64,000 nucleotides of DNA from contig JAYJKW010000399.1 of the NCBI GenBank assembly GCA_035084275.1, forward strand, positions 1,550,001 to 1,614,000, in the 5' to 3' direction. The notes beneath the pieces are model-generated. The model made no database searches and was not told where the DNA came from. It was given only the letters and a program-made list of their open reading frames with translations. Positions 34,966 to 63,473 of this stretch are shown here, one piece after another. A program made the position numbers and the translations under genes. Within the stretch, counting starts at the first letter, position 1. Each line of letters begins with the position of its first letter. The stretch is from Hydrolagus colliei (lineage: Eukaryota).

Positions 34966-35002
34966 TAACAATAGGGGGGGCGTGTCTCCCTGCCTCTCCC
35001 GT

Positions 35003-43835: not shown

Positions 43836-43860
43836 ATGAAACTGATAATCTTCTTCTTCG
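43836..43860 (+). CDS. Candidate alternative leader exon S1a of the SRCR-Ig receptor (MKLIIFFF)
   Basis: ATG AAA CTG ATA ATC TTC TTC TTC G|GTGAGT is phase 1 with a consensus donor. Joining it to the 36-nt exon gives MKLIIFFF-V-IFLDRISVEPA. Confidence 0.5.
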
Positions 43861-44289
43861 GTGAGTGAGCTTGCTGTTGCAATAATCGAAATTCCGCTCG
43901 GAAGCCTGTTGTACCCTCAAATGTGATTTATCCCCACGTCTGCTCTTTGACCTGCTCCATCTTTCACAACCACCGCATTAGCCGCCACCGTTCATCCTCT
44001 CTATTACCAACATAGAGAAATTCATCCCACATTAACTGCGCTTCGCTCACTTCCTTGCTTCTTTTATGCCATGTCTCCAGTCTCTCGATCTCATTCCTAG
44101 CACTAACGCCCATGCCCTCCATACCACCAGTTTGGATACAGATCCTTGACTTTCCACTTTGGGACGTTCATCTGCCGTTACACGCGCTGTGTACACATAC
44201 ATATTATTGTTGTTGTCCTCAACAAAGAAAGAGGAGAGAGAAGGAGAAAGGGAACAATAGATAGGAGAGAGGGAAGAATACATAGCAGT

Positions 44290-44660
44290 GAGTGGATAAT
44301 TGAAAGGAATTCCTCTGGTGGGTGAATGCAAGACAATAGGATATCGTCTATAAATTGGAAGCAGGTCAATTAAGATTTACAGCAGGAAGTATTGTTTCTC
44401 GCTCATAGCATAGTAGGAATATAGATTTCTCTCTTTATAGGTATCTTGGATGCTTGATCCATTCATTCCCTCAAGAATGAGATTGGTAGATTGTTGGTAA
44501 ATCGGATTTATGAAGCGATATGTGGAGAAAACCGGAAATTTGAATTGAACCAATTAGTTCAGATACAGATACGAATATCTGTACATATATCACACAATCT
44601 AATTCAATGGCAGAAGAAGCTCGAGTGGTTGAATGGCATATTACTGTTCCTATGTTACAA
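44290..44660 (+). mobile_element. Degenerate CR1 3' end
   Basis: 'cacaatctaattcaatggcagaagaagctcgagtggttgaatggcatattactgttcctatgtt' resembles the CR1 3' terminus. Confidence 0.7.
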
Positions 44661-45009
44661 GAATAGTGATAATGGAAAGGAAAGATAAGCTAGGAGAGGA
44701 GATACGAGTGGAAGCAGAGTTCAGGGAAAATAGTAACTCATAGGAGAGATGTGGGATAGAGGAGATGAAAGATCTTAAAAGAGGAGTGCGGTGAGTGTAT
44801 ATGAGAGAAAGGAGAGGGAAGATAAAGGAAATGAAGTAGATGAGAGGAGGGAGGATAGGCGATGTGACAGTGAGAAGAGGGAAAAGGAGGTGACAGGTGA
44901 AAGGAAAGGGGAAAGGAAAGGGAAGATAAGTTTCGGGTTTGAGGCCGTAACTGAACCACTTTCTTCTCAGAGACTCTAATCACAAACACAAACAATTGTC
45001 ACATAGGAA

Positions 45010-45040
45010 ATGGCCGTTCAGACATTGTGCGCGTTTTTAT
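45010..45040 (+). CDS. Candidate leader exon S1b of the SRCR-Ig receptor (MAVQTLCAFL)
   Basis: 31 nt, phase 1, donor T|GTATGT. Joining it to the 36-nt exon gives MAVQTLCAFL-L-IFLDRISVEPA. Confidence 0.6.
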
Positions 45041-45384
45041 GTATGTGTGTGTGTGAAGGGGGTGGGTCTGTGAAAGAGATTTATGTTCAGTCCCTCTCCC
45101 CCTGCTGTTCTCAACGAAACTGTGCAAGAACACACAATCCATCGTTTCAGTGCTGCTGTTCGTTCCTCTGCAGCAGATGCATATTCTATCCCCTATCCCT
45201 GCTCTCTCCAAATCGCGTCTTTGATTGTGTTCACTCCCCGCACTTTAGCCTTTTTGGTCATGACTTTAAAAGGCTGACCTATAGTTACTGATAATGATGG
45301 AGCGAGATGCAAGGTAGATCAGCTAAATGATTGTATGAATTACTGTATTAATGATTCATTTTCTAACTTTTTGTTGTTGTTCAG

Positions 45385-45420
45385 TGATATTTCTGGATAG
45401 AATCTCGGTGGAACCAGCAG
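45385..45420 (+). CDS. 36-nt signal-peptide mini-exon S2
   Basis: Pyrimidine tract ttttgttgttgttcag| then TGATATTTCTGGATAGAATCTCGGTGGAACCAGCAG|gtaagc. Exactly 36 nt, open in phase 1-1, and in frame with SRCR1. Confidence 0.8.
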
Positions 45421-47316
45421 GTAAGCTCCAATATTATTTATTCCAAAATATAGTATATATTCGCTTAGTCGTTTAGTTCCAGCATAACAAATCTGCCCAG
45501 TCACTTTAGCAAAATAGGTTTTATCTTTGCATCATTCATATTCATTTGCCACTGATGCCATCAAAGCAAGCCTACATCTTGCTTCTCTTAGTTTACACTT
45601 TATTTTGAAACTTGTTCTGTCATTCTTTGCATTCTTTCTATTCCTCGACCCCAATTGGTTGTTCTAACAGTTGCTGCCATGCCTTGATCTTGCTCCAGGT
45701 TTAATATTTATTTCCACTTATTCACTTTTCTGTTCGTTGTTTGATCGCCCTTGATGTTCACCTACATGTGATTCCTTGTTCGACGTCTATCCAATAGGAT
45801 CTGATTTACGGCCACAAATTTGATCCTTTGATCCAGCCTTCCGTGTTAAATTTTTGTTAATACTTTTTGGAATGTGTTTGTGTTTTACTTCTGTGGCGCT
45901 TGCCCTTGTGTCTTCCAATTTCTTTGCCGTTGTACCTGAGATCTTAATTTTAGTTCCTGTCATGTTATCCCATCTCCTATTATTCTGGACATGTTCGTCT
46001 GTTTCGGTGACTGTCACTGGTCATTTATTGGTAGACTTCTGTGGTTGATTATTGCCAAATCTTCATTTTCCTTTGACTCATTGGCTTGCTCCTTCCACCA
46101 TCTGTTCCTCTAGCGTGTATTCTGCAAACAATAATCTGTTGATCTATGTCCTATTGTTTTGAATTGTTATTATGTTCAGTTGTCAGAAATTGTGGCCCGT
46201 TATGACTAATTAATTTCTTAGCTACTCCCTCACTCGCTAATATTTATTTGGTTTTGTTTGCCACCTTTCCTGCAGATGTATCATATAATTCTGGGTATTT
46301 GCTACAGCTTTAGGTATCGACCACTGTCAATAAATATTTTTTCCCGTTATAACTGAAAAAATCTGTTCCTATTTTTCTCCATGCCATCATTTGTCTCTGG
46401 TAATCCTTTCAAGGTTCATGCCTTTCTCTAATTTAGCGGCTCACACATTGCTTTATATTTTTCACATTTTTAGATATATATTCGTTTTCATTTTATGTTG
46501 AAAACATATTAAAGTATCATCTTTTCTTTTTACCATATAATATAAATTGTATATGGTATCACTTTTCATACAAGTTCTTTCGCTACTGTTCCAATATCGA
46601 ATTACCTTTCCTACTGTTTCAATTTTTCTTTTTTAATACAGCATTAATTTTCATTTGCTTTCTCCATCTTTACCTTATTTGGTTCTCCCAATGTTGCATA
46701 TGCTTTGAATGCATTACACTAGTCTGTGCTTCTGTATCTAATCTGTACTGAATTACACATCTTAATTAGTAACACCATAAACATAACACCCACTCACTTT
46801 CAGTTTTATAGTTTGTTTTTTCGCTCTTTAGGTGTTCCACTGCTTCAATGCTTTGCTTCTCTTCATGATCACTGTCACTAGATTATATACTGGAGGTGTT
46901 TCTCCTTTCATATTCCATTGCTTTGGTTTCCCCAATTTTGGTTCTCCGGTTTTTTGACGTTTTCAACTCTCTTTCTTCGGTTTTTTCTGTGCTATAGATC
47001 TGCTATAACACCTTATATTTACTTGCCAATTCTCGCAAAGTACGTAAAATGCCAACATCACGGCATTGATACCATTCTTTTGTAGCTGCTGATCAACTCC
47101 TCATTCAATGTACTAATCCACATTTGCAACATCTGTACATTCTGTTTGGTTTCTCTTTTGGCCTGAATATTCTCGGCGCTTCATACACTTCATCTGCGAC
47201 ATTCCAGCTTTGCCAGGTGGCTATTTCATCTCTTTGTATTTGTGTGTCTCTCTCCATGTTTCTCGTACTTTATTCCATCTTTGGAAGATTTGAGCCTCAA
47301 ATAAGGAGGCTACTGT

Positions 47317-47924: not shown

Positions 47925-49150
47925 TATATAAAAACACAATAGTTAGGAGCAGGTGTAGGCGATTTGGCCACTCGAACCTGCCGCGGCTTTTGATAAGATC
48001 ATGGCTGATCTTCTGACCCATTTCTAATTACCTGCCCTATCCCATATATTCGAATCGTTCTATTTAAAAAAATTAACAATCTCAGCTTTGAAAATGTTCA
48101 ATTACTGAGCATCTACAGTCTTCTTGGGGTAGTGAATTCCATAAATTCACTACTCTCTGAGTGAAGAAGTGTTTCCTCAATACCGTTCTAAAAGATTGAC
48201 CCCTTAATTATAAGATGATTACCCACTAATTGTACTTCTGCTACCAGTGAGACAGTTCCTCACTGTCTACATTATCCAGCCCATTAAGAAACTTATATGT
48301 TTCAATAAGGTCTCCCCTAATGCTTCTGTACTCCAGAGAATACAGCCCTACGTTATTCAACCTATACTCATAGGTCAGTCTCCTCATCCCAGGAACCAAC
48401 CTCGTGAATCTACGCTGCACCCCATCTAAGGCAATTATGTCCTTTATTAAACAAGGAGACCAAAACTGCACACAGAACTCGGTCTCGCCAAGGCCCTTTT
48501 CACTTGCGACAAGACGTCCATACTCTTGTACTCTAAACCTTTTGCAATGAACGCTAACATGCCGATTACCTTCTGATTTGCTTCCTGCTCCAGCAAACTA
48601 ACATTTTTAGGCTGGTGTACAAGGAAAACCAAATCCCTTTGTGCACTAACATGACCTAAACCCTTCTCGCCTAGACTATATATATATTGCTATCTAGGTG
48701 AATAATGTCATACTTCCCTACCTTAAATTCCTTCTGCCACCTACTCGCCCACTCCCCTAGCCTAACTATATCCCTTTGCAATCTTTTGGCATCATCCGTA
48801 CAGCTGACTCCCCTACCTAGTTTACTGACATTCGGAAAATTAGACAAGAGAGTTCAATATCCTCGTCTGGATCATTGATGTAAATTGTAAATAGCTGACG
48901 CCCAAGCACTCATCCTTGTGGCACTCCATTAGTTGCATCCTGCCAATTCTACAATGATCTGTTTATCCCTGCTCTCTGTATTCTACCCGTTAGCCTCTCT
49001 TCGACCCATACTAATATGTTCGCATTAATCACATGGGCATTGACTTTGTGCAATAGCCTTTTGTGTGGCAATTTATCAAATGCTTCCCTAAATTCTAACT
49101 ATAGCACATCTAGTGGTTCCCCCAATTCAACATACTAGATATGTCCTCAA
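47925..49150 (-). mobile_element. CR1 LINE fragment
   Basis: Minus ORFs read QFWSPCLIKDIIALDGVQRRFTRLVPGM and IGMLAFIAKGLEYKS. The CR1 3' end is at the left. Confidence 0.92.
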
Positions 49151-49865
49151 CAAAACTCCAGAAGAATAGCTAATGATTAGTTTTGTCTTACACAACATTA
49201 CTGCTTCATAAAACTATATTCAACATACGTTTCAATATCAAATTCAATTGTCTTTTTAAGTTTGTAACCTATCCTCTTGCTTCAGGATTCAATGGGATGA
49301 GCAGGTGTAAGAATAGCAGCAGTAGTACATAGTGTTAGTTAACCAAGAGGTGAGGTGGTGGGGTGTCGAGCTTTAGAGCAGGAGGCTTATTGCACGGTCG
49401 TTGAGTTTCCCATTTGTAACTTGCTCACAGTGATCCTCAGCTCACACCACCCCCCACACACCTGCACCTATGACACTTACCCCTAGCTCACACTGACCAA
49501 GAACTCACACCGAAATATACCTTGCAGTATAATAATATAACATGCAATAATATCTAATAGTACAGAAGTGATTTTTTTCATTATATATTGATCTTTGTCT
49601 TTGCAAGTCTAGTGGCAGTCGACACAGCTAGCAATGTGATTACAATGGAACAAACGTTCATTGTCATTTTGATACAAAATTTGGGATTGTATGTCACCAC
49701 CAGCCACAGCCGACATTATAGTTACTTTTATTGTTGGTTTTATTGTTGTTGTTTTCCTTACCCTCTAGGCACCCTCGTAACGCGACAGATACCCTCCCGT
49801 ATGCATTGCGTAAATAGAAGTCAATCAGGAACCAAACTCTAACTAATGGATGGGCTATTTTACAG

Positions 49866-50189
49866 GAAATGTGAGGCTGCAGAATGGCAACAGTCAGTGT
49901 GCCGGGAGAGTGGAGCTTTACCACGATGGACAATGGGGCACAGTGAATGGCTATGGCTCCAGCGTTTATGGCTGGGATAATTTGGACGCTGCTGTGGTGT
50001 GTAAGGAGCTGGGCTGTGGAGCGGCGCTATCAGCACCAAAAGCATCTCACTTTGGGGAAGGCTCAGGTCCCATTGTGACGTATTATGTTCAATGCAGAGG
50101 CAGTGAGTCTGCTTTGAGTGAATGTCACTCAGAGCCCTGGGGTCACTATAGAAATACACACGACGATGATGCTGGCGTCATTTGCTCAG
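49866..50189 (+). CDS. SRCR domain exon 1 of the SRCR-Ig receptor
   Basis: TACAG|GA...TCAG|GTAAGT, 324 nt. GNVRLQNGNSQCAGRVELYHDGQWGTV...AAVVCKELGCG...HFGEGSGPI...VQCRGSESALSEC...DAGVICS. Confidence 0.96.
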
Positions 50190-51374
50190 GTAAGTACGTA
50201 TTTCTCTGATAACCATTTCGGTCTCACGGAAGAGGTTGTTTCGAAGATTGAAACATGTGGAGAGGAATTGATAACATGTGAGTTGAACAAAGTGATGGGT
50301 GAGCACATGTACGTAAACACATTGGGGTATTAGTACAAGGATGGGTGAGAATGGCGGTGAGAACATTGTGGTTAACAAAGGGTGCAGTGAACACTGGTCG
50401 AGTGAGTTTGGCGGAAGGGAAGATGAAAACAGTGGGTTTACGCACCACTGGGTTGGGGGAGGACACCAAGAACAACAAAATTGCAATTATAAAGCGCCTT
50501 TCATGTAGGGAAGAAGTCCCAAAACGCTGAACTGTCAGGTCGAGACACGAGCGGGGGCGCGGGGTATGTGTGTGGGGGGGAGGGGATTTCAGCAAAGGAG
50601 GCAGCACTTGTGTGCGTACCACAAGAGTCAATACAGGGACGTGAGAAAATAAAAGGTGACAATATCGGTGGCTTACGGTACGGGAAAGTTGAGTACACGC
50701 GGTGGTAGTGGGTAATCAGAGTGCGAGATGCAGCACAATCGGGGTTGAGAATATTGGAGGTGAGAACACGGCTGGGAAAACACAATACAGAGGAGATTGA
50801 GCATGGGGAAGGCAGGGATTTGAGTACAAATCGTGTTTGAGCACAGAGGAGTGAACCCAGAGGTATGTGTGTGTATGCGGGAGTGTATACAGCTGGAGAA
50901 CGCAGGAGGGCGTTTGGATATGGACAAGTGCGGTGACGCAGTTAAACATACGTTGGGGTGTCAAATCAGTGTGAGTGGAACCAGGAATCTTGAGCATATG
51001 GAAGTGCAAAGTCGGGTGAGTGATCGCATTGGGGTATCAAAGAGTGACCATAATGGGGATTATAAAAAGGTTGGGAGATGGGCCTAGCAGATGGGGTGAG
51101 CAGACGGAAGGAGCAGCGATGAATAGTTGAGCACACGAGCACAACTCGAGGTGGGGAGTAGGAGTGACTGTTGGGGGCAGGCATGAACACGGGTGTTCAT
51201 TGTAAATCAGGAGGGAGCATGACGGCAGGGTGGATGGAGTTGGGGGGACCTGGGTTGGGGGTGGAATCACAGGAGGGTAAACGATGCTGTAACAAAGTGT
51301 GGAAGCGCATTATGATTGGTGCGCGATTGGGTTGAGCACAATGTGCTCTTGTAAAGTACATCCTTGTAAAGTGG

Positions 51375-51715
51375 AGGTCCTATGGCTCAATGGTTAGAGT
51401 TCGTTTCTTGCAAGCTGGGTAGGTCAGGCTGGGGATATCTGTGTTCGAATCCTGGCAGGTCATGGCGAATCCTTGGACAAGTTTCCTTACTGCACAAGAC
51501 TAATAATAATCCCCCCAAAAAAACACAATAAAAATTGTTCATATGAATCCACGACTGTGTGTGGGACGCTGCTCTGCTCAATTAGCTGCCGTGATTCGCT
51601 CACAAATAGATACAGTCAATTCACTTTACAGTGAATTCTGTGAAGCGCTTTGGGACGTTGATTAGATGTGGAAAGCGCTGTATCAAGTGCAAGGATTATT
51701 ATATATTAGTATTAT
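51375..51715 (+). mobile_element. Deu-domain SINE
   Basis: Same head, Deu core and tail as the copy at 47317. Confidence 0.85.
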
Positions 51716-52439
51716 AAACACTCCCACTCACCCTCCTGTGCTCTCGCCTAACGTGTGCACTGATCCTGTTGTTGGCAACCGTTCAGCCGCCATATGCTCA
51801 CCCTCACACTTTTATGTGGCTCTCCAAAAATGTAATTTTGTTAGGGTGTTTAGACCGCTCACTTCTCACCCTCCCGTTATCACTACCCACTCGAAACCCC
51901 CAACCCAGATGCTGAATCCTCTGTGTCCTCAAATAATACATACAGTCTAACTTCCTCACCATCGTTCACACATCTTCCTTTGCGTTCACTCCGGCTGGTG
52001 GGAGTGGGAGTAAATCCGGTGTGAGCACATGCGAGGGTGATTGGGTTAGATCAACTAATTTGAATAAATGGAAACCGGCGTGGGCACATTTGAGAAAGAA
52101 GAGGTGGGTGAGGCGGGCAAACCCGGTGTAGCGAAGGCAACGGGTGCTGGTTTGAGGATGGAGTGAGTCAGAGATGTAGGTGGGTGCAGTGGAGTGGACG
52201 GATTTGAAGTCAATAGTAAGGATTGAAATCAATCAATTCTGGACGGGAAGCCAGTAAAGTCTGCAGGGACTGGGGTAATGGGGGAGCGAGGTTTGTTACG
52301 GGTGAGAATGCGGAGAGCAGAGATTAGAATGAGTTGGAGTTGATTGATTTTGGTTGAGAGGAATCCGACGAGGAGGGCTTTGGAATAGTAGAGGCCAGAG
52401 GTTAAATTGGCATGGAGCAGGGTTTCAGCGGCTCTTCGA

Positions 52440-53330
52440 TCTAGATATTGCCGGCAATCTTTCCCTCCCTCTCCCCCTTACCACCTTTCTCCCCTCTCTT
52501 CGTCACTGACTTTACCCAGCACGACACTTCCCTCCCTATCCAACATTATCCTCTTTCTCCCTATCTCCGCTTGCCCCATTTCCACGACTGTTTGTGTGAC
52601 ACTACAAAGTCGCTGCCGTGTTTCGCCCACAAATATACAATGAATTTTCATACTCTTCTTCTTCCTGCCCCGAGCCCGCCCTCCGCTGCTTTGTCTCTAA
52701 CTGACTGTACATCGCCTTGGGACTTCCTCTGTACGTGAATGGCGCTATAGAGATGTACGATTTTATTTCATCTGACGGAGCTGGAATAATGCGATGCTTG
52801 TGGGTGACAGGAAGAGGGGAAAGAAGAACAGTTGAGGCCGAATTACTCGCCTAGTTTGTGTACGGGTTCGAAGAGTTTTAGCGACAGGCATTGAAGGTGG
52901 AGGAGGTGAGAGGCATGCGAATGGAGAAGTGGACGGGAGCAAAACATTCAGCTGCAGGAGGTTCGCGCTCATCCAGGTCCTGATATCTGACAGGCAGGCT
53001 GCAAAGTGAGGCTGGATAAATAGATTTGGGTGTGTCATGTGGAAGTATATACCCCATGTCTGCGATTACATCGCAAAGATGGAGCATATAGATTAGGAAA
53101 ACAATGGAGCCAGGCGTGGATCCTTGGGGTACCCTGCATGTAACCAGGTGCGAGTGGGAGGAAAAGCCATCTGTGGAGCTATACTTCTGGGTTTTTTTGA
53201 GGTAGGATTCGAACCAGACAACACTGAGGTGGATGATGGAGGGCACGCGATGGAGGAGGATGGCGTGGTCGAATGTGCCAAACGCAGCGGACACCTCCAG
53301 GAAGATAAGGAGGAATAGGGAGCCCTACTC
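52440..53330. mobile_element. Deu/L2-tail element followed by a minus-strand L2 RT fragment
   Basis: The minus ORF reads SAAFGTFDHAILLHR...RVPQGSTPGSIVFLIYML, an L2 RT core. Confidence 0.75.
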
Positions 53331-53810
53331 ACAAATTGAGAGGACATTGTTTGTGACATTCATGATATTTGAAAGAGAGGTAGATATTTATTTGCGAGGT
53401 TATGCGGAGAGAGCTGGCGAGTGGGATTAAATTTCTGGTTTTAAAGAGATGGGCCTAATGTTCTCCTTTTGTGCCGGAAATTTCTATTATTCGATTATTA
53501 CATGATGCCGAGCTCCCCAGTCCACGAACTCACTTTGAAACTTAACTCCCGCTGCCCACTAGTTCAAATTGACTCCCAGCTCATATTGACCCTACTCCAG
53601 CTAACTCCGACTCGCAGAGGGGGCAGCACATGTTTTGACATGCTAAAGACACTTATTAATATCAGTACACTTAACTGCATCGTATCAAACCTCAGACGTA
53701 TTGAATCTTAGAGAATGACGCTGGACTGAAGGTCGTTCCTGATGTTCACTGTCACAGAACAGATCAGAGTCAGTATTTGCGAGATTATCCTTATTGTGTT
53801 TCAATTACAG

Positions 53811-54095
53811 ATTCAGTCCAGAAACCTACTATTTCCGTGAATTCAGATTATCGGGTGTTTGAGAGAGAGGACAAACGTGAGATCTCGTGTTCTGGAAATT
53901 ATCCTAGAAGCAAATTCTCTTTATACAGAGATGGCAATTTTATCACAACACAGCAAGCTCTAGGGATAAGCAACACGGTCACGTTCATCCCATCGGAGAT
54001 CATTGCAGGAAATTACTGGTGTAGCTATACTACACGAGTAGACAGCAAGGAGGCCACATCACCAGAGAGCGAACCAGTGCGACTGTATTTTCGTG
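53811..54095 (+). CDS. Ig C2-type exon 1 (FcR/LRC-like)
   Basis: TTACAG|AT...CGTG|GTAAG, 285 nt. DSVQKPTISV...EISCSGNYPRSKFSLYRDG...AGNYWCSY...SPESEPVRLYFRG. Confidence 0.94.
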
Positions 54096-54559
54096 GTAAG
54101 CGCAATATGTTTGAAATTGACCTATATGTTCGTTAACCAGTTGCAATCTCACAATAAGTAATTAATAGGGATCGAAAATAATGGAACGTAAATTATACTA
54201 TGATAAACGTTAACAATCGAACACGACGTATAACGATATAAAATCTATTAATATGCAATATAGTAATAAACTTGTTATACTAAATTTTGCATTCAATATT
54301 GGATAATTTTGTTGCACGCATAGCTGGAATGGATAAAGATAGTAATGGTAAAAAAATAGAATAAACGATTCATTGTTATTTTGAAAAAAAAGGATTGTAT
54401 TTCACCACCTGTCACTGCAAATATCATAGTTATTTGTATTGTTGTAGTATTGTTTACCGTCGAATCACGATCGCAATTTTACAGGTACCTGTCACGCACA
54501 TTGGGTGACTAGAAGTGAAAAGCAACTGAACTCATAATATTGAGTATTATATTATACAG

Positions 54560-54868
54560 GCAATGCAAAGCTCGTGAATGGCGGTAGCCCGTGTTCCGGG
54601 AGAGTGGAGCTTAAACAACATGGACAATGGAGGAAAATATCTGGCTTTGGTTGGAATATGAAGGCCGCAGCTGTGGTCTGTAAGGAGCTGGGCTGTGGTC
54701 ATGCGCTCTCAGCACCAGCAATCACTCACTTTGGGGAAAGCTCAGGTCGCAATGTGACTCACGATGTTCAGTGCACAGGGAGTGAGTCTACCCTGAGGGA
54801 ATGTCACTCGCATCCCTCGAGTAACCATTCAACGCCTCACGACAATGTTGCGGGCGTCATCTGCTCAG
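54560..54868 (+). CDS. SRCR domain exon 2
   Basis: ATACAG|GC...TCAG|GTAAAT, 309 nt. GNAKLVNGGSPCSGRVELKQHGQW...AAVVCKELGCG...HFGESSG...VQCTGSESTLREC...AGVICS. Confidence 0.96.
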
Positions 54869-57291
54869 GTAAATACTTCTATCTCTGATCGCCAACGGAG
54901 TACCGGGCAGGCAGTGAGAGCATAGTTGGTGGGCAGTTTGTAAATTCGGAGGGTAATTTAGGAAGGGTGAGCTGAGCAAAGTGGTGGGTGAGCATGGCGA
55001 CGCAAGGGGTTTTTCACCATCAGGAGTGTGGTGTGCACGTTGGTGGGATCAGTGGGGGAGTGAGCAAAAGGCACTTGTTGGATACAGAAGCGTTTGGTGG
55101 TGCAAACTCGCAGTTAGGAGAGAGGTTTTGCATAGGGGGCAGCATAGCAATGTGGAGCACAAGGGGCGACACAGTGACGTGAGAAACAAAATGATGATCA
55201 TAACATGGCTTATGGTACAGGAGAGTTGAACTCGCAACAACAACAAAATTATATTGATAGTGCGCGTTTCACGTTGTGTGTCCCAAGGCGCTGAACAATC
55301 AGCTCAGGAAGCAAGAGATGGGGGTGGGGATGGGGAGTGGGGGGGGGGTGATTCGATGTAGTGGGAAGGAGAGTAGGAGAGTGGGAAATGTTAGTAGGTG
55401 TGCCAATGTCGCGGTCGAAGATAAAGGTTTTGAGACCGGACTTGAAGGAGGGGAAGGAGGAGGTGAGGCGAAGGGATTGCTGGATGTAGTTCCAGAGTGT
55501 GAGCACGGATGCTGAAAGCCCGGCCACCGATGGATTGGCGTTAGGGCGGTGGACGCAGAACAGGCCAGAGTATGTTGAGTTGAGGTATCGGGCAGGCTGA
55601 TGGGGAGACAGTAGGCAGTTGTGGGTGAACACAGCGATAGATGAAGCAGAATCGATCGTGATAAAATGTGAGGTGAGTATACGACTGGGAAAAAAAAACA
55701 GTTTGGGAGTATAGAGAGGATTGAATCTATTTGGTCGGTGTGGTGGGTGTAATGTCAGAGCTCAGAGGGCGTTATCACAAGTTTTTGAAGATGTGAGGAG
55801 CACAATGGGAGCCATTAACGGATTCGTTGAGGTCACGGTTGGAGCACAGATGGAGATTTGAGCACAGGAGTGATCAGCAAAAGCAGGGAGTGAACTCAGG
55901 TGGGAATGTGCAATTCTAACTGGGGTAAGAGTGTTTCCATAGGTAGCGGGGATCAGCAATGGGGTTTGGTGAAACACACGAGTGTGAACCAAGAGGGTGG
56001 TTGTAACAGGGTGTGTAAGCATATTATAGCGTGCGGAGATTCGGTTGAGCACAGGGTGCTCCTGTCTATTACGCATACCCACTGTGCTAATCCGTTATTC
56101 TCACAGCGCGTCCACTCCAATGTGTTATTGCCTCCTGTGTGCATTTCAGCTGCGATTCACACCCACTGCATTCACCTGCCACATACTCACCCACACGCGT
56201 GTAAGATCTCAAAGACACTCTATGGATGGAATTTGGATGTTGGTCTTGTTGCTGTATGTAGCCCCAACTTTGCTCACGCTGTCGTGATCATCAACCAATG
56301 TGCTCGAATACCTCCCCTCTCCCCTCTCCCCCGCCTCCCCCCACCGTGCTCAACCCACTGTGTTGACTCACAGTGCTCTACCCTCCCTCAACCATGTTCT
56401 CTCATCATATTCTCTGATCACTTCGGAGTAGGATGGGGGGGATGGAGGGTGGAATCAAGCGAGGATGAGCAAAAGGGAGGGAAACAAACGTGGGCAGAAC
56501 TGAAATGAGTTCAATACATGCACAACGGGCCTGTGCTCATTGGCAAAGCATAGGTGGATGAGCACATGGCGGAGCAAAGTTTGCAGGCGCACATCGAGGT
56601 TAGCAAGTCGTGGCAACATAGGCAGGTGTGGGTTCATGGAGGGGTGCCATTTGGGACGGAACACAGTGAGTGTGAGCAAAGTGCGATGAGCACAGGTATC
56701 TTATCACCAAAATGTGCTATGCACACGGGAAGTGCTGTGAACACTGGAGTTGGGGCCGGGTGGATGCTGAGCAAAGGTAGCCGTGCTCGGTGTACATTGC
56801 AGTGGGTTAAGGCGAGCATGTTCGTGGCGCTGATAACATCGTAGATGTACGGGGGTGTGGACACGGGCCTTATTGAAAATACGGATTGAATACGGGTTGG
56901 AGACGACCGGGTGAACATGTGCTCATAATAGAAAAGGTTTTGCAACGGGGCGTTTCAGCAAGGGTTGATCGAGGAACAATAAATTAGGCATTTAGCGCAG
57001 GCGACTGATAACAGGGACAGTTTTTTACACTGACCCCCATTACACACTATCCGCTCCTCACTCGGAATCCTAGCTCACACTGACGCCCAGAAAAATGTTT
57101 GAATGCAGCAGAAAAACTGTCCATTCAAGACCCGGATTAATAATATTTTACATTTCCATCTTGTATTAATCCTCGGGAGGCATCAATTCTATGGGCTGTC
57201 ACTGGACTCATTGGCGATCCCGATGCACATTGGCACAGCGAAGGTGAAAGGAAGTGTTGGGGAGATTATCTTTGTTGTGTTTTGATTACAG

Positions 57292-57576
57292 ATTGGGTCC
57301 AGAAACCCAACATTTCCATGAAGCCAGATTCTCAGGTGTTTGTGAGAGGAGAGGTTGCTGAGATCTCATGTTCTGGAAATTTTCCTGGCAGCACATTCTC
57401 TTTATCCAGAGACGGCGAGTTTATCACATCACAAAAAGCTTCAGAGAATAACAACATTGCCACGTTCAACCAAACGGAGATCAGAGCAGGAAAGTACTGG
57501 TGTAAATATATTGCACGCGTAGGCAGCAGAGAGATCACATCACCAGAGAGCGAGCGAGTGCGAATCTATGTTTATG
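57292..57576 (+). CDS. Ig C2-type exon 2
   Basis: TTACAG|AT...TATG|GTAAG, 285 nt. DWVQKPNIS...EISCSGNFPGSTFSLSRDG...AGKYWCKY...SPESERVRIYVYG. Confidence 0.94.
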
Positions 57577-58081
57577 GTAAGAGAAATATCCCTCACAGTA
57601 TCATGTTTGTCGGTTCACCAGTTCAAGCCTCACAATATGCCATCGATTATCACCTCGTTAATACATCTCAGAATGCGGAGACGCAACATACTATCATTGT
57701 GGAGTCCTATACCTCAATGAATAGAGCACTCGTCTTTCTCCTCAAGCCCAATAATAATCTCTAAAGGAAAATATATTAAATTGATCATTTAATTTCACGA
57801 ATGTTTATGGGAAACTGTTCTACACAAATGGTTGCCGAATTTCGTCACACATATATATAGTCAAATCATTTTACATTATACGCATTGAATCTCGTTGAGA
57901 CGTCTAGAAGACAAGTAAAAATGGTTAGATCAAACGGAAGGATTATTATTAACATTACTAACTGTTTAATTTGTGGTGGAAATACGAATCGAATAACAAT
58001 CGTGTCCCTACTTTTTGTGAAATCAGCAGAGGTGCACGTGGGTGAGGGAACTTGCCAAAGTTTCTTCCTACCCGGGAATTT

Positions 58082-60214: not shown

Positions 60215-60499
60215 ATCCGATGCAAAAACCCACCATTTCCATGAACCAGGCCACTGGTGTATTTTTGGCAGTGGAAAGTGCTGAGATCACGTGTTCTGGG
60301 AATTATCCTGGTAGCATTTTCTCATTATACAGAGGTAGAAACATGACCGCATCAAAAACAGCAAAACATGGTCATTCCACAGCAACATTTGTCGAAACGC
60401 AGATAACGAAAGGCAGTTACAGATGTGAATATACAAAGCAATTATACGATCGACTGCTAAGGTCACCAAGGAGTGATGTAGTGAAAATCTACGTTAGAG
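60215..60499 (+). CDS. Ig C2-type exon 3
   Basis: TTCCAG|AT...AGAG|GTAAG, 285 nt. DPMQKPTISM...EITCSGNYPGSIFSLYRG...GSYRCEY...SPRSDVVKIYVRG. Confidence 0.94.
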
Positions 60500-61135
60500 G
60501 TAAGAACGAGAGCATGAGCGTTTGCACGTCCGTTTGCAAATCTAATTGTCTTTTATCAGTTGCAGAGAAACAATAATAAGGCTTCTATCGGATACTACAA
60601 ACTTGAGACAATTTAAATGTAGATCCTCACAATTCGATTCAAATCCACTCAATCCATGGCACCTCTCTCCCTTTCCACATTTAGCCCCCTTTCCCTTACC
60701 CAATCCAATATCTGATGCATCCGATAGACTGCCACATTTATCCTTCACATATGTGACTATTTTCCCCATAGGTGGATGTCGTGCATTAAGTCAATACGCC
60801 CCCAAACTGTGGATCTCTCCCTCAATCCCACTGTCTACCCCAACACCGCACTCTCCCCATTTTCATGTCCTTTCTGAAAATATTATCATTCAACCAGCAA
60901 ATAAGGCCTCCTGTCCCCACTCCCTCCCCACTCCAACCCCCCACCGCCCCCACCCCACTCCCTGCCCCACTACCATCTCGGAGAGAATATTGATAAGAGC
61001 TGCCGAGACGTGGCAATAAATCTAAGACAAAGATAATCTCGAAGACAGTGACTGGGCTCTTGTTGAGACTCATACTCGTTAGCACAGATCAGAGCGTGTG
61101 TTTGTAAGGTCATCTTCATCTTGTTTTAACTTCAG

Positions 61136-61441
61136 ATCCACCCCAGAAACCCAGCATTTCCCTGAGGCCGGAATACCGGAATTTTGTGGAAGGGGAAAGT
61201 GTTGAGATCTCGTGTTCTGGGAACTATTCTGGGAGCAAATTCTCTTTATACAGAGAAGTGGAGACGATCATATCAACCATATCTACAGCATATAGTTATG
61301 CAGCAACACAGTCTATTTACAGGGCAAGATTTACTCCATTCAAGATCATTAAGGGGAGATACTGGTGTACATACACTAAACAAATCTACGGACGAGAGCT
61401 CAGGTCACCAGCGAGCGAGCGATTGAGAATCATTGTGAGCG
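61136..61441 (+). CDS. Ig C2-type exon 4
   Basis: CTTCAG|AT...AGCG|GTAAG, 306 nt. DPPQKPSISLRPEY...EISCSGNYSGSKFSLYRE...GRYWCTY...SPASERLRIIVSG. Confidence 0.94.
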
Positions 61442-63167
61442 GTAAGAGAGAGAGCCTGCGATCTCTCACCAATCTCTATAGTCTCATTCAATTACCGGAT
61501 TGTTTTATGACCAGTTACTGATGGACACTAATAACAACAATTTCATATGATTTCATGTAATTGAGACGCCTCTAATGGCTATGTAGGAAACATCATCGAG
61601 TAAACTCACTGAAATGTTTGTGTGTAGAACAATCGGCTATCAATCTGGTTGATGAAGAAAGGAAATTTGACAGTGTTTGTTCCATCGCCTTTGAACGTCG
61701 CCTTGACAATAAATGCGCTATACTAGTGTAGTGCTGTTGTTGGTACTATCTAACAATCAAATGCATATAATCGCCATTGGCAGACAGCGCTCTTAAATAG
61801 GGCACAGGAATTCTGGCTTCTATGAAGCAAGCGTTTAAAACGATGCGTTTTAAACCTAATTATTTTTTGTATAATAACAATATTCCTTCACGTTGAAACC
61901 ACAACACGCCTCAACCACTTTTGAAAGTACAGTGACTGATGCTTGATGGCAAACGCAACATCCGACTTATGCACAGTAAATTCGCTTGTACGAAGTGAGT
62001 TGGTATCCAACAATATTTGACATCAACAAATGGCTTTCGGATCGCGTGTGTTACAGGATACGTAACAGTCCAGGATTGGCTCCACAAACTAAAGTACCTA
62101 AAATAAAATTATTATGGTACAGCTGATTTCTGGTTGTGAGGAAGTTCCGTGGCGCTACACAGTATGCAGCTGACTTTTACAGGTCTCTGAGAGCAGGATC
62201 GAGCAGGGGTTGGGCCGAACTCGTGTTGGAGCTGAGATGAGGGTGCAGCTCGTCTGGTAGGCGAAATAGAATCAATAGCGCAAAGAAACGGTTGGTTCCT
62301 GATGTAGAACTCGAACTAGATGAGAGAGGACCAAGCCAGACACGCACAACAACAGTTTCGATTTATATAGGGGAACACCAAGCATGTCGGTGTGTCAGAT
62401 TGCTTCAACCATGTTTGGGATGGAGCATTAGTACAGACAAAGAATGGAGTACTATTGTTATTAATCATAATTACATTTATTATTATACTTTTCAGCCATC
62501 TTTCAGAATTTTTAAAGCATTTCAATAAATTCAGTGAATACACTGTAGATTTGTGGGTGGAATGTCGCAGGAAACCGCACAAAGCAGAGTCCCATAAATA
62601 ACGGCAGAGTCAGTTGTGTTTTTGCCTATCACAGAGTTCAGTAGGGGCGACTGTGCAGAAGGAATGAAAGGTGTGAATCAGGATCTTGATCGCAATCCGC
62701 CGGAAACTGACAGCCAAAATCTGACAACCTAAATATTCAATTGTACGGGATAATTGTTATTCAGGAAAGTTGGAAAATCACAAGGAGCCGCTGTATATTT
62801 ATTTCCAGCTGAATTAAACGTAGACTGAACTTTGGTTTAACTTATCTTCCAATGGAAGCTATATCCACAACGTTGTTGTCCTCCAGCGCGGCACTGGAGC
62901 AATTGCCTGCACTGTGACCTTAAATTCGTTGCCACGTGGTTTCACCCCATATTCGTCTTATTCTGAGATGAGAGTGTTTGATACGGGGCCAAACTGACAT
63001 CCAATCTCAGACAAACACTGGTAAGAGCTGCCGAGACCTGGCATTAAATATAATACAAAAAACAGTCCCAAAGGCTTTGACTGGACTCATCTTGAGACTC
63101 AAACGTAGTATCAGCACAGATCAGTGCGAATTTTTGTGACGTTACCTTCTTTTTGTTTTAATTTCAG

Positions 63168-63473
63168 ATCCGCCGCAGAAACCCATCATTTCCTTGAAAC
63201 CACAATACCGGAATTTTGTGGAAGGGGAAATTGCTGAGATATCATGTTCTGGGAATTATTACGGCAGCAAATTCTCTTTATACAGAGAAAACGAGATGAT
63301 AGCAACCACATCATCTGCACGATATAGTTATGTGGCAGCACCATTGCTTTACACAGCAACATTTACTCCATTTAAGATCATGACGGGAATTTACTGGTGT
63401 ATATACACTAAACAAACATACAGTCGAGAGCTCAAGTCGCCAGTGAGCGAGCGAGTGAGAATCTTCGTGAGAG
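63168..63473 (+). CDS. Ig C2-type exon 5 (tandem duplicate of exon 4); the gene continues beyond the window
   Basis: TTTCAG|AT...AGAG|GTAAG, 306 nt. DPPQKPIISLKPQY...EISCSGNYYGSKFSLYRE...GIYWCIY...SPVSERVRIFVRG. Confidence 0.94.

What the first reader, a model, noticed from the sequence alone, without database searches (positions are those of the whole stretch)
43836..63473. Hybrid SRCR/Ig leukocyte-type receptor: leader-SRCR-Ig-SRCR-Ig-Ig-Ig-Ig-...
Seen: nine same-strand exons with canonical splice sites, all phase 1-1 and stop-free, join into one secretory-pathway protein with two SRCR and at least five C2-type Ig domains. Known: the Ig pattern (KPxIS...ISCSG..F.LYR.G...G.Y.C.Y...S.xS) resembles FcR/LRC-family domains (LILR, KIR, GP6, CHIR). 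Single-exon SRCR repeats are the building blocks of WC1, CD163/SCART, CD5 and CD6, several of which are T-cell co-receptors. The mammalian receptors I know do not interleave these two domain types. Inference: this is a lineage-specific or ancient pattern-recognition receptor or co-receptor. Symmetric exons would allow in-frame skipping and domain-number variation. Similar fish models may already exist under automated labels such as DMBT1-like or M130-like; I cannot check this.
Basis: partly seen in the sequence, partly recalled or inferred. Interest (0 to 1): 0.85.

Follow-up and report, generated by a model that had tools for sequence, protein, structure and literature searches.

The report
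Chimaera-type SRCR/LILR-like hybrid receptor gene
The window holds the intact 5' part of a real cartilaginous-fish gene for a cell-surface-type protein that alternates scavenger-receptor (SRCR) modules with LILR/KIR-like immunoglobulin modules. It belongs to a large family that genome databases already predict under misleading automatic names, and I found no paper that studies it.

Summary
Nine + strand exons (43836-63473), all with AG/GT splice sites, join into a stop-free 720-residue N-terminal protein: split leader, then SRCR-Ig-SRCR-Ig-Ig-Ig-Ig. The gene runs off the right end of the window, so no transmembrane or tail exon is visible.

The Ig domains are closest to leukocyte-receptor-complex (LRC) proteins (PirB, LILRB, NKp46, KIR, CHIR, OSCAR), then Fc receptors. 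This holds for both sequence profile and predicted fold. The second leader exon is 36 nt, not the 21 nt typical of FcR/FCRL genes.

The SRCR domains are single-exon, group-B-like but derived. They have six cysteines, lack C2 and C7, and lack the Asp residues of the canonical cation-binding site.

The closest relatives (46-59% identity) are Callorhinchus milii models. The full-length ones have a transmembrane segment and two ITIMs. More distant relatives with interleaved SRCR and Ig domains occur in sharks, rays, a characin and a caecilian, labelled DMBT1-like, M130-like, IGSF1-like, A1BG-like, FCRL5 or LILRA6.

The gene is therefore a new member, from a holocephalan-specific subfamily, of an ancient, database-visible but uncharacterised receptor family. 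It bears on published statements that cartilaginous fish lack LRC/FcR-like receptors. Its function is inferred, not shown.

The parts
43836..43860 (+). Leader exon 1: ATG plus 8 codons (MKLIIFFF) plus 1 nt, donor G|gtgagt, ends in phase 1.
   Evidence: It parallels the C. milii leader exon MKTFVVLLL+G|gtgagt and the P0203 N-terminus MESLFIIF.
45385..45420 (+). Leader exon 2: 36 nt, phase 1-1, encodes VIFLDRISVEPA (the rest of the hydrophobic core and the cleavage region).
   Evidence: AG acceptor, gtaagc donor. It is homologous to the 36-nt C. milii mini-exon at L001 21583-21618. Sequence up to 136 bp upstream of it aligns to C. milii loci. A 36-nt equivalent exists in Chiloscyllium.
49866..50189 (+). 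SRCR domain 1 exon: 324 nt, phase 1-1. Six cysteines; C2 and C7 absent.
53811..54095 (+). Ig domain 1 exon: 285 nt, phase 1-1. LRC-like C2-type Ig.
54560..54868 (+). SRCR domain 2 exon: 309 nt, phase 1-1. It lies 464 bp downstream of Ig1.
57292..57576 (+). Ig domain 2 exon: 285 nt, phase 1-1.
60215..60499 (+). Ig domain 3 exon: 285 nt, phase 1-1.
61136..61441 (+). Ig domain 4 exon: 306 nt, phase 1-1. It carries a 7-residue longer middle segment than Ig1-3.
63168..63473 (+). Ig domain 5 exon: 306 nt, phase 1-1. It is the last exon in the window and has a GT donor, so the gene continues beyond 64000.
49574..54156 (+). First SRCR-intron-Ig block. It is paralogous to the second block at 54285-57637.
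   Evidence: 49574-50210 matches 54285-54889 at 70.5% nt; 50467-50692 matches 55117-55353 at about 70-72%; 53721-54156 matches 57202-57637 at 75%. The similarity includes intron sequence, so the interleaving arose by tandem duplication of an SRCR-Ig unit.
60975..64000 (+). Ig4/Ig5 tandem repeat, period about 2.03 kb. The second copy is cut by the end of the window.
   Evidence: 87% nt identity over 1005 bp. By part: upstream intron 77.5%, exon 80%, downstream intron 95%.

Best explanation
This is the 5' two-thirds or more of a functional-looking gene for a type I, secretory-pathway multidomain receptor. It belongs to a family in cartilaginous fish whose ectodomains mix group-B-type SRCR modules with LRC (LILR/PIR/KIR/NKp46)-like C2 Ig modules.

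Shown directly:
- A split signal peptide (25 nt plus a 36-nt second exon).
- The domain order SRCR-Ig-SRCR-Ig-Ig-Ig-Ig, one domain per phase 1-1 exon.
- The interleaved order arose by tandem duplication of an SRCR-Ig exon pair. The Ig4/Ig5 pair shows further Ig exon duplication, and its repeat runs into the window edge, so more Ig exons probably follow.

The source genome is holocephalan (chimaera lineage). Coding identity to C. milii is 46-59%, against about 31% to elasmobranch relatives, and intron flanks still align to C. milii.

Inferred from the nearest full-length C. milii relatives (SRCR-SRCR-Ig(2-4)-TM-tail with VTYATV and IIYANL):
- The missing 3' exons most likely encode a transmembrane segment and an ITIM-bearing tail.
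- The protein would then act as an inhibitory (SHP-phosphatase-recruiting) immune receptor.
- In-frame exon skipping could vary its ectodomain length.

Inferred from sequence: the SRCR modules of this subfamily have lost the C2-C7 disulfide and the Asp residues of the canonical dual cation site. They therefore probably bind a specific (protein) ligand rather than polyanionic microbial patterns in the Ca2+-dependent DMBT1/MARCO manner.
For: Gene model:
- Domain identities: Pfam SRCR 1.3e-51 plus Ig_2, Ig_3 and Ig_C19orf38. SRCR is closest to CD163, PIT54, CD5L, CD6 and DMBT1.
- The Ig profile is closest to PirB 7.5e-19, LILRB2 8.7e-10, LILRB1, NKp46, KIR3DL1, FceRIa and OSCAR. The 60 best PDB sequences shown include no other Ig-superfamily class.
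- The predicted Ig1 fold (pLDDT 80-92) matches NKp46, LILRB4 D1 (TM 0.81, rmsd 2.3 A), LILRA5, PirB, CHIR-AB1, OSCAR and LAIR1, then FcgRIIa.

One gene rather than several:
- The Ig1-SRCR2 intron is 464 bp.
- No homolog of the C. milii transmembrane or tail exons was found anywhere in the window.

Family:
- A word-indexed search with the Ig part found only C. milii proteins plus one unnamed entry.
- An exhaustive HMMER profile search found 1076 proteins at E<=1e-3 and 132 at E<=1e-30.
- Of about 160 scored proteins, 50 carry both domain types and 26 are interleaved.
- Named examples come from Narcine, Pristis, Scyliorhinus, Chiloscyllium, Heptranchias, Cetorhinus, Callorhinchus, Astyanax and the caecilian Geotrypetes.
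- ITIM tails occur in C. milii P0035, P0082, P0121 and P0125, and in Ig-only relatives from Pristis, Hypanus, Carcharodon, Heterodontus and Mobula.
- The 36-nt second leader exon is conserved in the window, C. milii and Chiloscyllium.

Origin: the block duplications are shown.

Intactness:
- Pairwise dN/dS among the domain exons is 0.40-0.71, except Ig1/Ig2 at 1.1.
- All 720 codons are open.

Derived SRCR: six cysteines, no C2 or C7, and no 'CDD' or 'LDD' motif in the window and several C. milii members. Elasmobranch, teleost and caecilian hybrids mostly keep 8 cysteines and, in most domains, 'CDD'. The cation-site residues are defined in PMC7043408.
Against: - No transcript evidence is available for this gene or species.
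- The 3' end is outside the window. Membrane anchoring, ITIMs and the total domain number rest on paralogs or orthologs that are only 46-59% identical.
- The same family also contains short-tailed members with no ITIM. C. milii P0126 and P0207 have an Arg at the start of the hydrophobic segment.
- Some models have no transmembrane segment at all.
- Most long elasmobranch interleaved members have short tails without an ITIM.
- The relationship of the Ig domains to the LRC is distant. The best single-domain i-Evalue against PirB is 1.3e-4, so orthology to the mammalian LRC is not established.
- The SRCR part of the structural model had low confidence (pLDDT 30-59), so nothing structural can be said about it.
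- The region is rich in decayed genes. Two neighbouring V segments and both GPR139-like copies are defective, so a recently silenced gene cannot be excluded.
Confidence: 0.6

Rival explanations
1. The product is secreted or soluble. It would be a multidomain scavenger or opsonin-like protein in the manner of mouse FCRLS, DMBT1, CD5L or A1BG, not a signalling membrane receptor.
For: - No transmembrane exon is present in the window.
- Several family models lack a predicted transmembrane segment.
- FCRLS, the only described mammalian Ig+SRCR chimera, is soluble (PMC7940838).
- RefSeq labels some relatives A1BG-like.
Against: - The closest full-length relatives (C. milii P0035, P0121, P0125) and most of the long elasmobranch interleaved proteins examined end in a transmembrane segment.
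- Many of the models without a transmembrane segment are obviously partial, for example P0203 and P0124.
Confidence: 0.15
2. It is an activating or adaptor-coupled (or signalling-neutral, short-tailed) member of a paired-receptor family, rather than an ITIM-bearing inhibitory one.
For: - C. milii P0126 and P0207 have 'GIVNVARLIVVITLPLVIIFLLV' with an Arg near the outer end of the hydrophobic segment, and a short tail.
- P0001 and P0030 have short tails.
- The long elasmobranch interleaved members have 22-40-residue tails without an ITIM.
- The domain order closest to the window's is in Chiloscyllium P0135 (SISISISIIIIII), which has a short tail.
Against: - The relatives with the highest identity over SRCR plus Ig and a complete 3' end (P0035, P0121, P0125) carry two ITIMs.
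- One study reported that the FcR gamma adaptor was not found in cartilaginous fish (PMC4016189).
Confidence: 0.2
3. It is a T-cell co-receptor functionally tied to the adjacent antigen-receptor V cluster, analogous to WC1 or SCART on gamma-delta T cells.
For: - Three germline V segments with 23-bp-spacer recombination signal sequences (RSS) lie 11-20 kb upstream on the same strand.
- By my own knowledge, WC1 and SCART are SRCR co-receptors of gamma-delta T cells.
Against: - No V segments were detected in about 290 kb of six related loci (five from C. milii, one from Chiloscyllium). The linkage is therefore not a conserved feature of the family.
- Two of the three V segments are defective: one has a frameshift, and one has Trp in place of the conserved first Cys.
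- The V segments could not be assigned to a TCR chain.
- There are no expression data.
Confidence: 0.08
4. It is an unexpressed relic or young pseudogene in a decaying, repeat-rich region. Alternatively, the exons belong to two or more separate genes.
For: - The neighbouring V segments and both GPR139-like ORFs carry frameshifts or stops.
- LINE reverse-transcriptase fragments sit in two introns.
- Ig1/Ig2 dN/dS is about 1.1.
Against: - All nine exons are open, with canonical splice sites and conserved cysteines.
- Most exon pairs have dN/dS of 0.40-0.71 at dS 0.41-0.92.
- The 464-bp Ig1-SRCR2 intron leaves no room for a gene boundary.
- Interleaved models recur in many species.
Confidence: 0.07

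Closest known systems
Callorhinchus milii predicted SRCR/Ig receptors (XP_007910464 'uncharacterized LOC103191288', XP_042201871 'M130-like', LOC103173597, A0A4W3GG99 'A1BG-like', XP_007882646 'IGSF1-like')
   Same: - 46-59% amino-acid identity.
- The same 6-Cys SRCR variant and the same Ig consensus (DPLQKPxISL...ISCSGNYPGSxFSLYRDG...AGxYWCxY...SPESE).
- The same 25-28 nt plus 36 nt split leader.
- Alignable intron flanks.
- GPR139-like genes next door.
   Different: - The C. milii 6-Cys models examined have their SRCR domains grouped at the N-terminus (SS-IIII, S-III). The window gene is interleaved (SISIIII...).
- The one interleaved C. milii model seen (P0219, S-I-S) uses canonical 8-Cys SRCR domains.
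- All of these are automated predictions with no described function.
Elasmobranch, teleost and caecilian interleaved SRCR/Ig giants (e.g. Scyliorhinus canicula XP_038642640 'DMBT1-like', Chiloscyllium punctatum XP_072409711, Pristis pectinata XP_051864821, Narcine bancroftii XP_069783103, Astyanax P0065, Geotrypetes XP_033817435)
   Same: - Interleaved SRCR and LRC/FcR-like Ig domains followed by a transmembrane segment.
- A 36-nt second leader exon and one domain per exon in Chiloscyllium.
   Different: - Only about 31% identity.
- Mostly canonical 8-Cys SRCR domains, most of them with the CDD motif.
- Much longer (1300-3200 aa), with short tails and no ITIM.
Mammalian and avian LRC Ig-like receptors (LILR/PIR, KIR, NKp46, OSCAR, LAIR1, CHIR)
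   Same: - They are the best sequence-profile and fold matches for the Ig domains.
- Phase-1 single-domain exons.
- A 36-nt second signal-peptide exon. That this is an LRC hallmark is my own knowledge; I could not find it in a held paper.
- ITIM tails in the nearest relatives.
   Different: - LRC receptors have no SRCR domains.
- The similarity is distant (best single-domain i-Evalue 1.3e-4).
- Synteny with the LRC was not shown: the neighbours here are V segments and GPR139-like genes.
[quoted passage not shown]
   Same: It is the only described mammalian protein that combines FcR/LRC-type Ig domains with a group-B SRCR domain (PMC7940838, PMC2413239).
   Different: FCRLS:
- has a gene with one exon for a type-B SRCR domain, and its SRCR-like domain is 62% identical to mouse CD5L;
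- has no transmembrane segment;
- has a 21-bp second leader exon;
- is of inferred eutherian origin, by FCRL x CD5L recombination.

Here there are two SRCR domains, N-terminal and interleaved, with a 36-nt leader exon. The fusion is therefore independent.
SRCR superfamily group B receptors (CD163, WC1/SCART, CD5L, CD6, DMBT1)
   Same: - The SRCR domains score best against these (CD163 3e-166 summed over its domains, CD5L 4e-52, CD6 6e-34, DMBT1 5e-25).
- One exon per domain.
- The C1-C4 cysteines are retained.
   Different: - These proteins have no Ig domains.
- The window's SRCR domains lack C2 and C7 and the D/D...D/D cation-site residues (PMC7043408).

Membership tests
Chondrichthyan SRCR/LRC-like-Ig hybrid receptor family (database models only, uncharacterised) | The same Ig domain type (profile A1 consensus) combined with SRCR domains in one polypeptide. 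| tested here: met
   all five window Ig domains fit the profile. Of about 160 relatives scored, 50 carry both domain types.
Chondrichthyan SRCR/LRC-like-Ig hybrid receptor family (database models only, uncharacterised) | Split leader with a 36-nt phase 1-1 second exon, and one domain per phase 1-1 exon. | tested here: met
   Window; C. milii L001; Chiloscyllium L006.
Chondrichthyan SRCR/LRC-like-Ig hybrid receptor family (database models only, uncharacterised) | C-terminal transmembrane segment with a cytoplasmic tail (ITIM-bearing or short). | not testable with these tools
   The 3' end lies beyond position 64000. No homolog of the C. milii transmembrane or tail exons is in the window.
Holocephalan 6-Cys SRCR subfamily | SRCR domain with C1, C3, C4, C5, C6 and C8 but without C2 and C7, and a remodelled loop after 'WGTV'. 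| tested here: met
   both window SRCR domains and C. milii P0035, P0121 and P0203 are 6-Cys and lack C2 and C7 (the first SRCR of P0126 also lacks them but has 7 Cys). Most SRCR domains of the elasmobranch, teleost and caecilian relatives have 8 Cys.
LRC Ig-like receptors (LILR/KIR/PIR/CHIR/NKp46/OSCAR) | Ig domains closest in sequence and fold to LRC members. | tested here: met
   the top PDB hits are LRC proteins, with FceRIa appearing from rank 10; the top Ig fold matches are NKp46, LILRB4, LILRA5, PirB, CHIR-AB1, OSCAR and LAIR1.
LRC Ig-like receptors (LILR/KIR/PIR/CHIR/NKp46/OSCAR) | Signal peptide split over two exons, the second of 36 bp (hallmark recalled from my own knowledge, not found in a held paper). 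| tested here: met
   Exon 45385-45420 is 36 nt. Attempts to cite the rule failed.
LRC Ig-like receptors (LILR/KIR/PIR/CHIR/NKp46/OSCAR) | Ectodomain made only of C2 Ig domains. | tested here: not met
   Two SRCR domains are interleaved with the Ig domains.
LRC Ig-like receptors (LILR/KIR/PIR/CHIR/NKp46/OSCAR) | Location in the conserved LRC syntenic block. | tested here: inconclusive
   The window neighbours are antigen-receptor V segments, GPR139-like genes and LINE fragments. No LRC framework genes were seen, but only 64 kb is visible.
FcR / FCRL family, including FCRLS | Second leader exon of 21 bp (PMC7940838, PMC2413239). | tested here: not met
   The second leader exon is 36 nt.
FcR / FCRL family, including FCRLS | Ig domains of FcR D1-D5 subtypes as the closest relatives. 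| tested here: inconclusive
   FceRIa (1.2e-5) and FcgRII appear below the leading LRC proteins in both the sequence and the fold searches. No subtype-level tree was built.
SRCR superfamily group B (CD163/WC1/CD5L/CD6/DMBT1) | SRCR domain encoded by a single exon, with the C1-C4 disulfide cysteines present. | tested here: met
SRCR superfamily group B (CD163/WC1/CD5L/CD6/DMBT1) | Eight cysteines per domain and conserved dual cation-site residues (PMC7043408). | tested here: not met
   Six cysteines. The positions of D1019/D1020 read N-G and S-G, and those of D1058/D1059 read Y-Y and H-D. Placement is by alignment to canonical SRCR domains in A2. The mapping of DMBT1 residue numbers onto motifs is my own inference.
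WC1/SCART gamma-delta T-cell co-receptors | Ectodomain of SRCR domains only, and expression on gamma-delta T cells. | tested here: not met
   Ig domains make up most of the ectodomain. Expression is not testable.

The most novel reading that the evidence does not exclude
The family shows that LRC/FcR-type inhibitory Ig receptors predate the split between bony and cartilaginous fish, and that they were originally, or very early, fused with SRCR modules.

The holocephalan 6-Cys subfamily, which here sits inside an antigen-receptor V-gene cluster, would be a lymphocyte co-receptor system whose SRCR modules have been re-tooled from cation-dependent pattern binding to specific protein recognition. 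That would make it a cartilaginous-fish counterpart of both LILR/KIR and WC1.
Probability: 0.12. Interest if true: 0.8.

Novelty: new variant of a known kind. Interest (0 to 1): 0.5.

Why it matters
Two papers state that cartilaginous fish lack these receptors. [quoted passage not shown]

This gene and its hundreds of relatives show that chimaeras, sharks and rays do have large families of LRC/FcR-like Ig receptors. Many carry ITIMs, and many are fused with SRCR modules.

That gives concrete candidates for inhibitory and activating leukocyte receptors, and possibly Ig- or MHC-binding receptors, in the oldest jawed vertebrates. The origin of the LRC and FcR families becomes directly testable with domain trees, synteny and binding assays.

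The derived 6-Cys SRCR domain, which lacks the cation-site residues, is also a natural experiment on how the SRCR fold changes its binding mode.

On the practical side, the automated names of these genes (DMBT1-like, M130-like, IGSF1-like, A1BG-like, CEACAM5-like, HSPG2-like, FCRL5, LILRA6) are inconsistent and hide the family.

Tried and rejected
1. Searched the window for transmembrane, tail, short-SRCR and PRY/SPRY exons homologous to C. milii family members. Only chance-level matches appeared among those inspected (E>=2.9, all for the transmembrane/tail query). The receptor's signalling end cannot be read here.

2. Tried to type the upstream V segments as a particular TCR or Ig chain by PDB sequence search. 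The result was ambiguous, mixing lambda, VH, TCR beta and TCR alpha.

3. Tried to identify the source species through the GPR139-like ORF. There was no near-identical protein; the best hit is C. milii at 73%. The species remains 'holocephalan, not in the annotated set, or an unannotated C. milii region'.

4. Looked for conserved linkage of the family to V segments in six related loci. None was found.

5. Ran six literature searches for a description of SRCR/Ig hybrids in sharks or fish. Only FCRLS and general reviews turned up. Absence from this library is not proof of absence.

6. Tried to find a citable source for the 36-bp LRC leader-exon rule. This failed, so the rule is marked as my own knowledge.

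7. The AlphaFold model of SRCR1-Ig1, built from a 9-sequence alignment, gave a usable Ig domain but a low-confidence SRCR domain (pLDDT 30-59). No structural claim is made for the SRCR part.

8. An early tblastn table mixed two loci stored in one file. It was redone per record, and only one search is used.

9. Tandem-repeat and tRNA scans of the flanks gave nothing relevant.

Full report
**Observation**

The window has no N runs. A six-frame scan for long stop-free stretches, followed by tblastn with the candidate domain peptides, finds exactly two SRCR-like and five Ig-like exons. All are on the + strand between 49.8 and 63.5 kb.

Reading the boundaries gives these exons:
- SRCR1: 49866-50189.
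- Ig1: 53811-54095.
- SRCR2: 54560-54868.
- Ig2: 57292-57576.
- Ig3: 60215-60499.
- Ig4: 61136-61441.
- Ig5: 63168-63473.

Each has an AG acceptor and a GT donor, a length divisible by three, and phase 1-1.

The ATG at 43836 opens a 25-nt exon (MKLIIFFF plus G|gtgagt). On its own this is too short to be a signal peptide. The missing ninth exon was found by analogy with a Callorhinchus milii relative, whose leader is split into 'MKTFVVLLL' and a 36-nt mini-exon 'VIFLEGKTGECA'. The window has a 36-nt phase 1-1 exon at 45385-45420 that encodes 'VIFLDRISVEPA', with a pyrimidine-rich acceptor and a gtaagc donor.

The spliced product is 720 residues, stop-free, and begins MKLIIFFFVIFLDRISVEPA|GNVRLQNG. 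Pfam confirms two SRCR domains (E=1.3e-51) and several Ig domains (Ig_3 1.2e-20, Ig_2 8e-16, Ig_C19orf38 1.1e-15).

**One gene or several**

The introns measure 1524, 4445, 3621, 464, 2423, 2638, 636 and 1726 bp. The Ig1-to-SRCR2 intron of 464 bp leaves no room for transmembrane, tail and leader exons. tblastn with the transmembrane and tail segments of C. milii relatives finds nothing in the window. The SRCR and Ig exons therefore belong to one transcription unit, which continues past position 64000.

**How the interleaved order arose**

Self-comparison of the gene at the nucleotide level shows that the SRCR1-intron-Ig1 block is paralogous to SRCR2-intron-Ig2, intron sequence included:
- 49574-50210 matches 54285-54889 at 70.5%.
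- 50467-50692 matches 55117-55353 at about 70-72%.
- 53721-54156 matches 57202-57637 at 75%.

The Ig4 unit (60975-61971) matches the Ig5 unit (63004-64000) at 87%, and this repeat is truncated by the window edge.

Within that repeat the downstream intron is 95% identical, the exon 80% and the upstream intron 77.5%. This mosaic suggests recent gene conversion or unequal crossing-over, and hints at further Ig units beyond the window.

Pairwise dN/dS is 0.40-0.71 for most exon pairs and 1.1 for Ig1/Ig2. That is compatible with a maintained reading frame and relaxed or diversifying evolution of the membrane-distal Ig domains. The estimates rest on about 100 codons each and are noisy.

**What the domains are**

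*Ig domains*
- A profile of the five window Ig domains plus ten C. milii domains (A1) was searched against all PDB sequences.
- It hits PirB (7.5e-19), LILRB2, LILRB1, NKp46, KIR3DL1, FceRI alpha, LILRA6, OSCAR and KIR2DL. The 60 best sequences shown include no other Ig-superfamily class.
- An AlphaFold model of SRCR1-Ig1 has a confident Ig domain (pLDDT 80-92) and a poor SRCR domain.
- Foldseek places the Ig domain next to NKp46, LILRB4 D1 (TM 0.81), LILRA5, PirB, CHIR-AB1, OSCAR and LAIR1, then FcgRIIa/b.

*SRCR domains*
- They score best against CD163, PIT54, CD5L, CD6 and DMBT1.
- They are single-exon and retain C1 and C4, so they are group-B-like.
- They have only six cysteines. Alignment with canonical domains (A2) shows that C2 ('WGTVC') and C7 are both replaced, and that the loop after WGTV is lengthened.
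- The Asp pairs that form the dual cation site in DMBT1 (D1019/D1020, D1058/D1059; PMC7043408) correspond to N-G/S-G and Y-Y/H-D here. I mapped the DMBT1 residue numbers onto the 'CDD' and 'LDD' motifs myself.

**Gene-structure hallmark**

FcR and FCRL genes, including FCRLS, have a 21-bp second leader exon (PMC7940838; PMC2413239). Here it is 36 nt. The same holds in C. milii and in a Chiloscyllium punctatum relative. To my knowledge, 36 bp is the size typical of LRC genes (KIR, LILR, FCAR, CHIR). I could not find a held paper that states this.

**Relatives**

- A search with the whole product was swamped by SRCR-only proteins, but it revealed C. milii models that carry both domain types.
- Restricting the word-indexed search to the Ig part gave 11 hits: ten C. 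milii proteins and one unnamed entry.
- An exhaustive HMMER search with the Ig profile found 1076 proteins at E<=1e-3 and 132 at E<=1e-30.
- Domain mapping of the best 150 or so, plus earlier hits, shows 50 with both SRCR and Ig domains and 26 with an Ig followed by an SRCR (interleaved).

Names were retrieved for 30 of them:
- Narcine bancroftii 'uncharacterized', 2368 aa.
- Pristis pectinata LOC127566442, 3218 aa.
- Scyliorhinus canicula 'DMBT1-like', order SSISIISISIIIIII-TM.
- Chiloscyllium punctatum, order SISISISIIIIII-TM.
- Heptranchias perlo 'DMBT1-like'.
- Cetorhinus maximus 'M130-like'.
- Amblyraja radiata 'IGSF1'.
- Mobula birostris 'FCRL5'.
- Carcharodon carcharias 'LILRA6' and 'A1BG-like' (with ITIM).
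- Hypanus sabinus 'CEACAM5-like'.
- The caecilian Geotrypetes seraphini 'DMBT1-like', order SSSSISSSISSISSI-TM.
- Astyanax mexicanus 'DMBT1-like', order SSISSSISII-TM.
- Turtle, eel and skink Ig-only proteins with ITIMs.

The interleaved architecture is old and widespread among non-mammalian jawed vertebrates.

**Where the window gene sits in the family**

Its best matches are C. milii proteins at 46-59% identity (P0203 58.7% over leader, SRCR and Ig; P0121 54%; P0035 51%). Elasmobranch relatives reach about 31%.

The window's exons align to C. milii loci at 70-79% nt, and the alignments run 50-200 bp into the upstream introns. The 6-Cys SRCR variant is shared only with C. milii members. Elasmobranch, teleost and caecilian hybrids mostly have 8-Cys SRCR domains, most with 'CDD'.

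The source is therefore a holocephalan. It is either a relative of C. milii or an unannotated C. milii region, since no near-identical protein exists for the receptor or for the neighbouring GPCR.

The full-length C. milii relatives are SRCR-SRCR-Ig(2-4)-TM, with tails that carry VTYATV or VTYAVV and IIYANL (ITIM consensus), plus a terminal PVYATV or PIYATV. Other paralogs have short tails. P0126 and P0207 have an Arg at the start of the hydrophobic segment, which is reminiscent of paired activating forms.

**Mechanism**

The mechanism is partly shown and partly inferred.

Shown:
- A secretory leader.
- A modular ectodomain.
- Symmetric exons.
- A history of block duplication.

Inferred from relatives:
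- Type I membrane topology.
- ITIM-based inhibitory signalling through SH2 phosphatases.

Inferred from isoform sets of relatives (Narcine X1-X6, Pristis X1-X3):
- Domain-number variation, with the isoforms differing in length by roughly one to several domains. Exon skipping would explain this but was not checked.

Inferred from sequence:
- The 6-Cys SRCR modules no longer use the canonical Ca2+-dependent acidic site, so they are more likely to recognise a specific protein ligand than polyanionic microbial surfaces.

The ligand, the expressing cell and the signalling polarity are unknown.

**Context**

Upstream on the same strand lie three germline antigen-receptor V segments with heptamer / 23-bp spacer / nonamer signals:
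- About 24.0-24.4 kb: frameshifted.
- About 28.6-29.0 kb: CACAGTG-23-ACATAAACC, but with Trp in place of the first conserved Cys.
- About 31.9-32.3 kb: intact.

Their chain type could not be assigned.

Further upstream are two members of the chondrichthyan 'probable GPR139' expansion. The copy at 8505-9428 has an in-frame stop at 8502-8504 between the only candidate start codon and the rest of the ORF. The copy at 16861-17783 is frameshifted.

GPR139-like genes also flank SRCR/Ig genes on two C. milii scaffolds (L002 and L003). One of them is 77% identical to the window copy, which suggests a shared ancestral block.

No V segments were found in six related loci totalling about 290 kb. The proximity to V genes is therefore probably specific to this locus.

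**Comparison with the literature**

Mouse FCRLS is the known Ig+SRCR chimera. It is soluble, its gene includes one exon for a type-B SRCR domain (the domain is 62% identical to mouse CD5L), it has the 21-bp leader exon, and it is inferred to be a eutherian invention (PMC7940838). It is therefore an independent fusion.

Akula et al. 2014 (PMC4016189) reported no homologs of PIGR, FcR gamma chain or the other Fc-receptor-related genes they screened for, and no C2-only LRC homologs, in shark genomes. [quoted passage not shown]

The present family, with LRC/FcR-like Ig domains, ITIM tails and the 36-nt leader exon, argues that relatives of these receptor families do exist in Chondrichthyes, frequently fused to SRCR modules. 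I found no paper in the held library that describes them.

**Verdict**

It is a new member, from a holocephalan-specific 6-Cys SRCR subfamily and with an interleaved order, of an ancient but uncharacterised SRCR/LRC-like-Ig receptor family. That family is already visible in databases under inconsistent automated names.

Interest is moderate (0.5). The architecture is not unique. The family matters mainly as an unexploited handle on the origin of the LRC and FcR receptor families.

Noticed in passing
window 24021-24405, 28573-29013, 31939-32286 (+): Three germline antigen-receptor V gene segments with 23-bp-spacer recombination signals lie on the same strand as the receptor gene. V2 has CACAGTG-23-ACATAAACC and V3 has CACAGTG-23-ACACTTCCT. 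V1 needs a frameshift, V2 has Trp in place of the first conserved Cys, and V3 looks intact. About 4 kb spacing with no J or C exons in between suggests a translocon-type (TCR-like) locus, but the chain type could not be assigned.
   Followed up: partly
window 8433-9428 (+) and 16861-17783 (+): Two copies of the chondrichthyan 'probable GPR139' GPCR expansion. The first has an in-frame stop at 8502-8504 between the only candidate Met and the rest of the ORF. The second needs a frameshift and a stop read-through. Both are likely pseudogenes. The closest homolog is C. milii (73-77% aa), and GPR139-like genes also sit beside SRCR/Ig genes in C. milii loci L002 and L003.
   Followed up: partly
window 61442-61971 vs 63474-64000: The introns downstream of Ig4 and Ig5 are 95% identical (499/526). 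The exons themselves are only 80% identical and the upstream introns 77.5%. This mosaic points to recent gene conversion or unequal crossing-over inside the Ig array, or to fast exon divergence.
   Followed up: partly
window about 35000-41800: A 7-kb C/A-rich low-complexity tract lies between the last V segment and the receptor gene. GC skew falls to -0.38, AT skew is positive, and the ORFs read as THTHT/PHTH runs. Tandem Repeats Finder reports no regular array at score >=150.
   Followed up: partly
window 21058-22500 (+), 36759-37205 (+), 48244-48689 (-), 52881-53359 (-), 12919-13374 (+): LINE-type reverse-transcriptase fragments. Pfam RVT_1 was confirmed for 21505-22500; the others were recognised by reading their translations (LRGDLIEVYKIMRG-like tails in several). 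Two sit inside introns of the receptor gene. Short interspersed repeats at 15160-15410 and 18133-18300 match many copies in the C. milii loci at 70-75%.
   Followed up: no
L003 (C. milii MU249886.1) 1498-23365; protein P0124: A C. milii model joins SRCR-Ig-Ig to a PRY/SPRY (B30.2) domain and is labelled 'TRIM17-like'. It is either a butyrophilin-like architecture built on this family's ectodomain or a chimeric gene prediction.
   Followed up: no
C. milii proteins P0126 / P0207 (L001): These short-tailed family members have an Arg near the start of the transmembrane-like segment (GIVNVARLIVVITLPLVIIFLLV). Together with the ITIM-bearing paralogs, this hints at paired activating and inhibitory forms.
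   Followed up: no
window 11710-11784 (+): ARAGORN reports a tRNA-like fold with an undetermined two-base anticodon. It is probably a SINE or tRNA-derived repeat rather than a gene.
   Followed up: no
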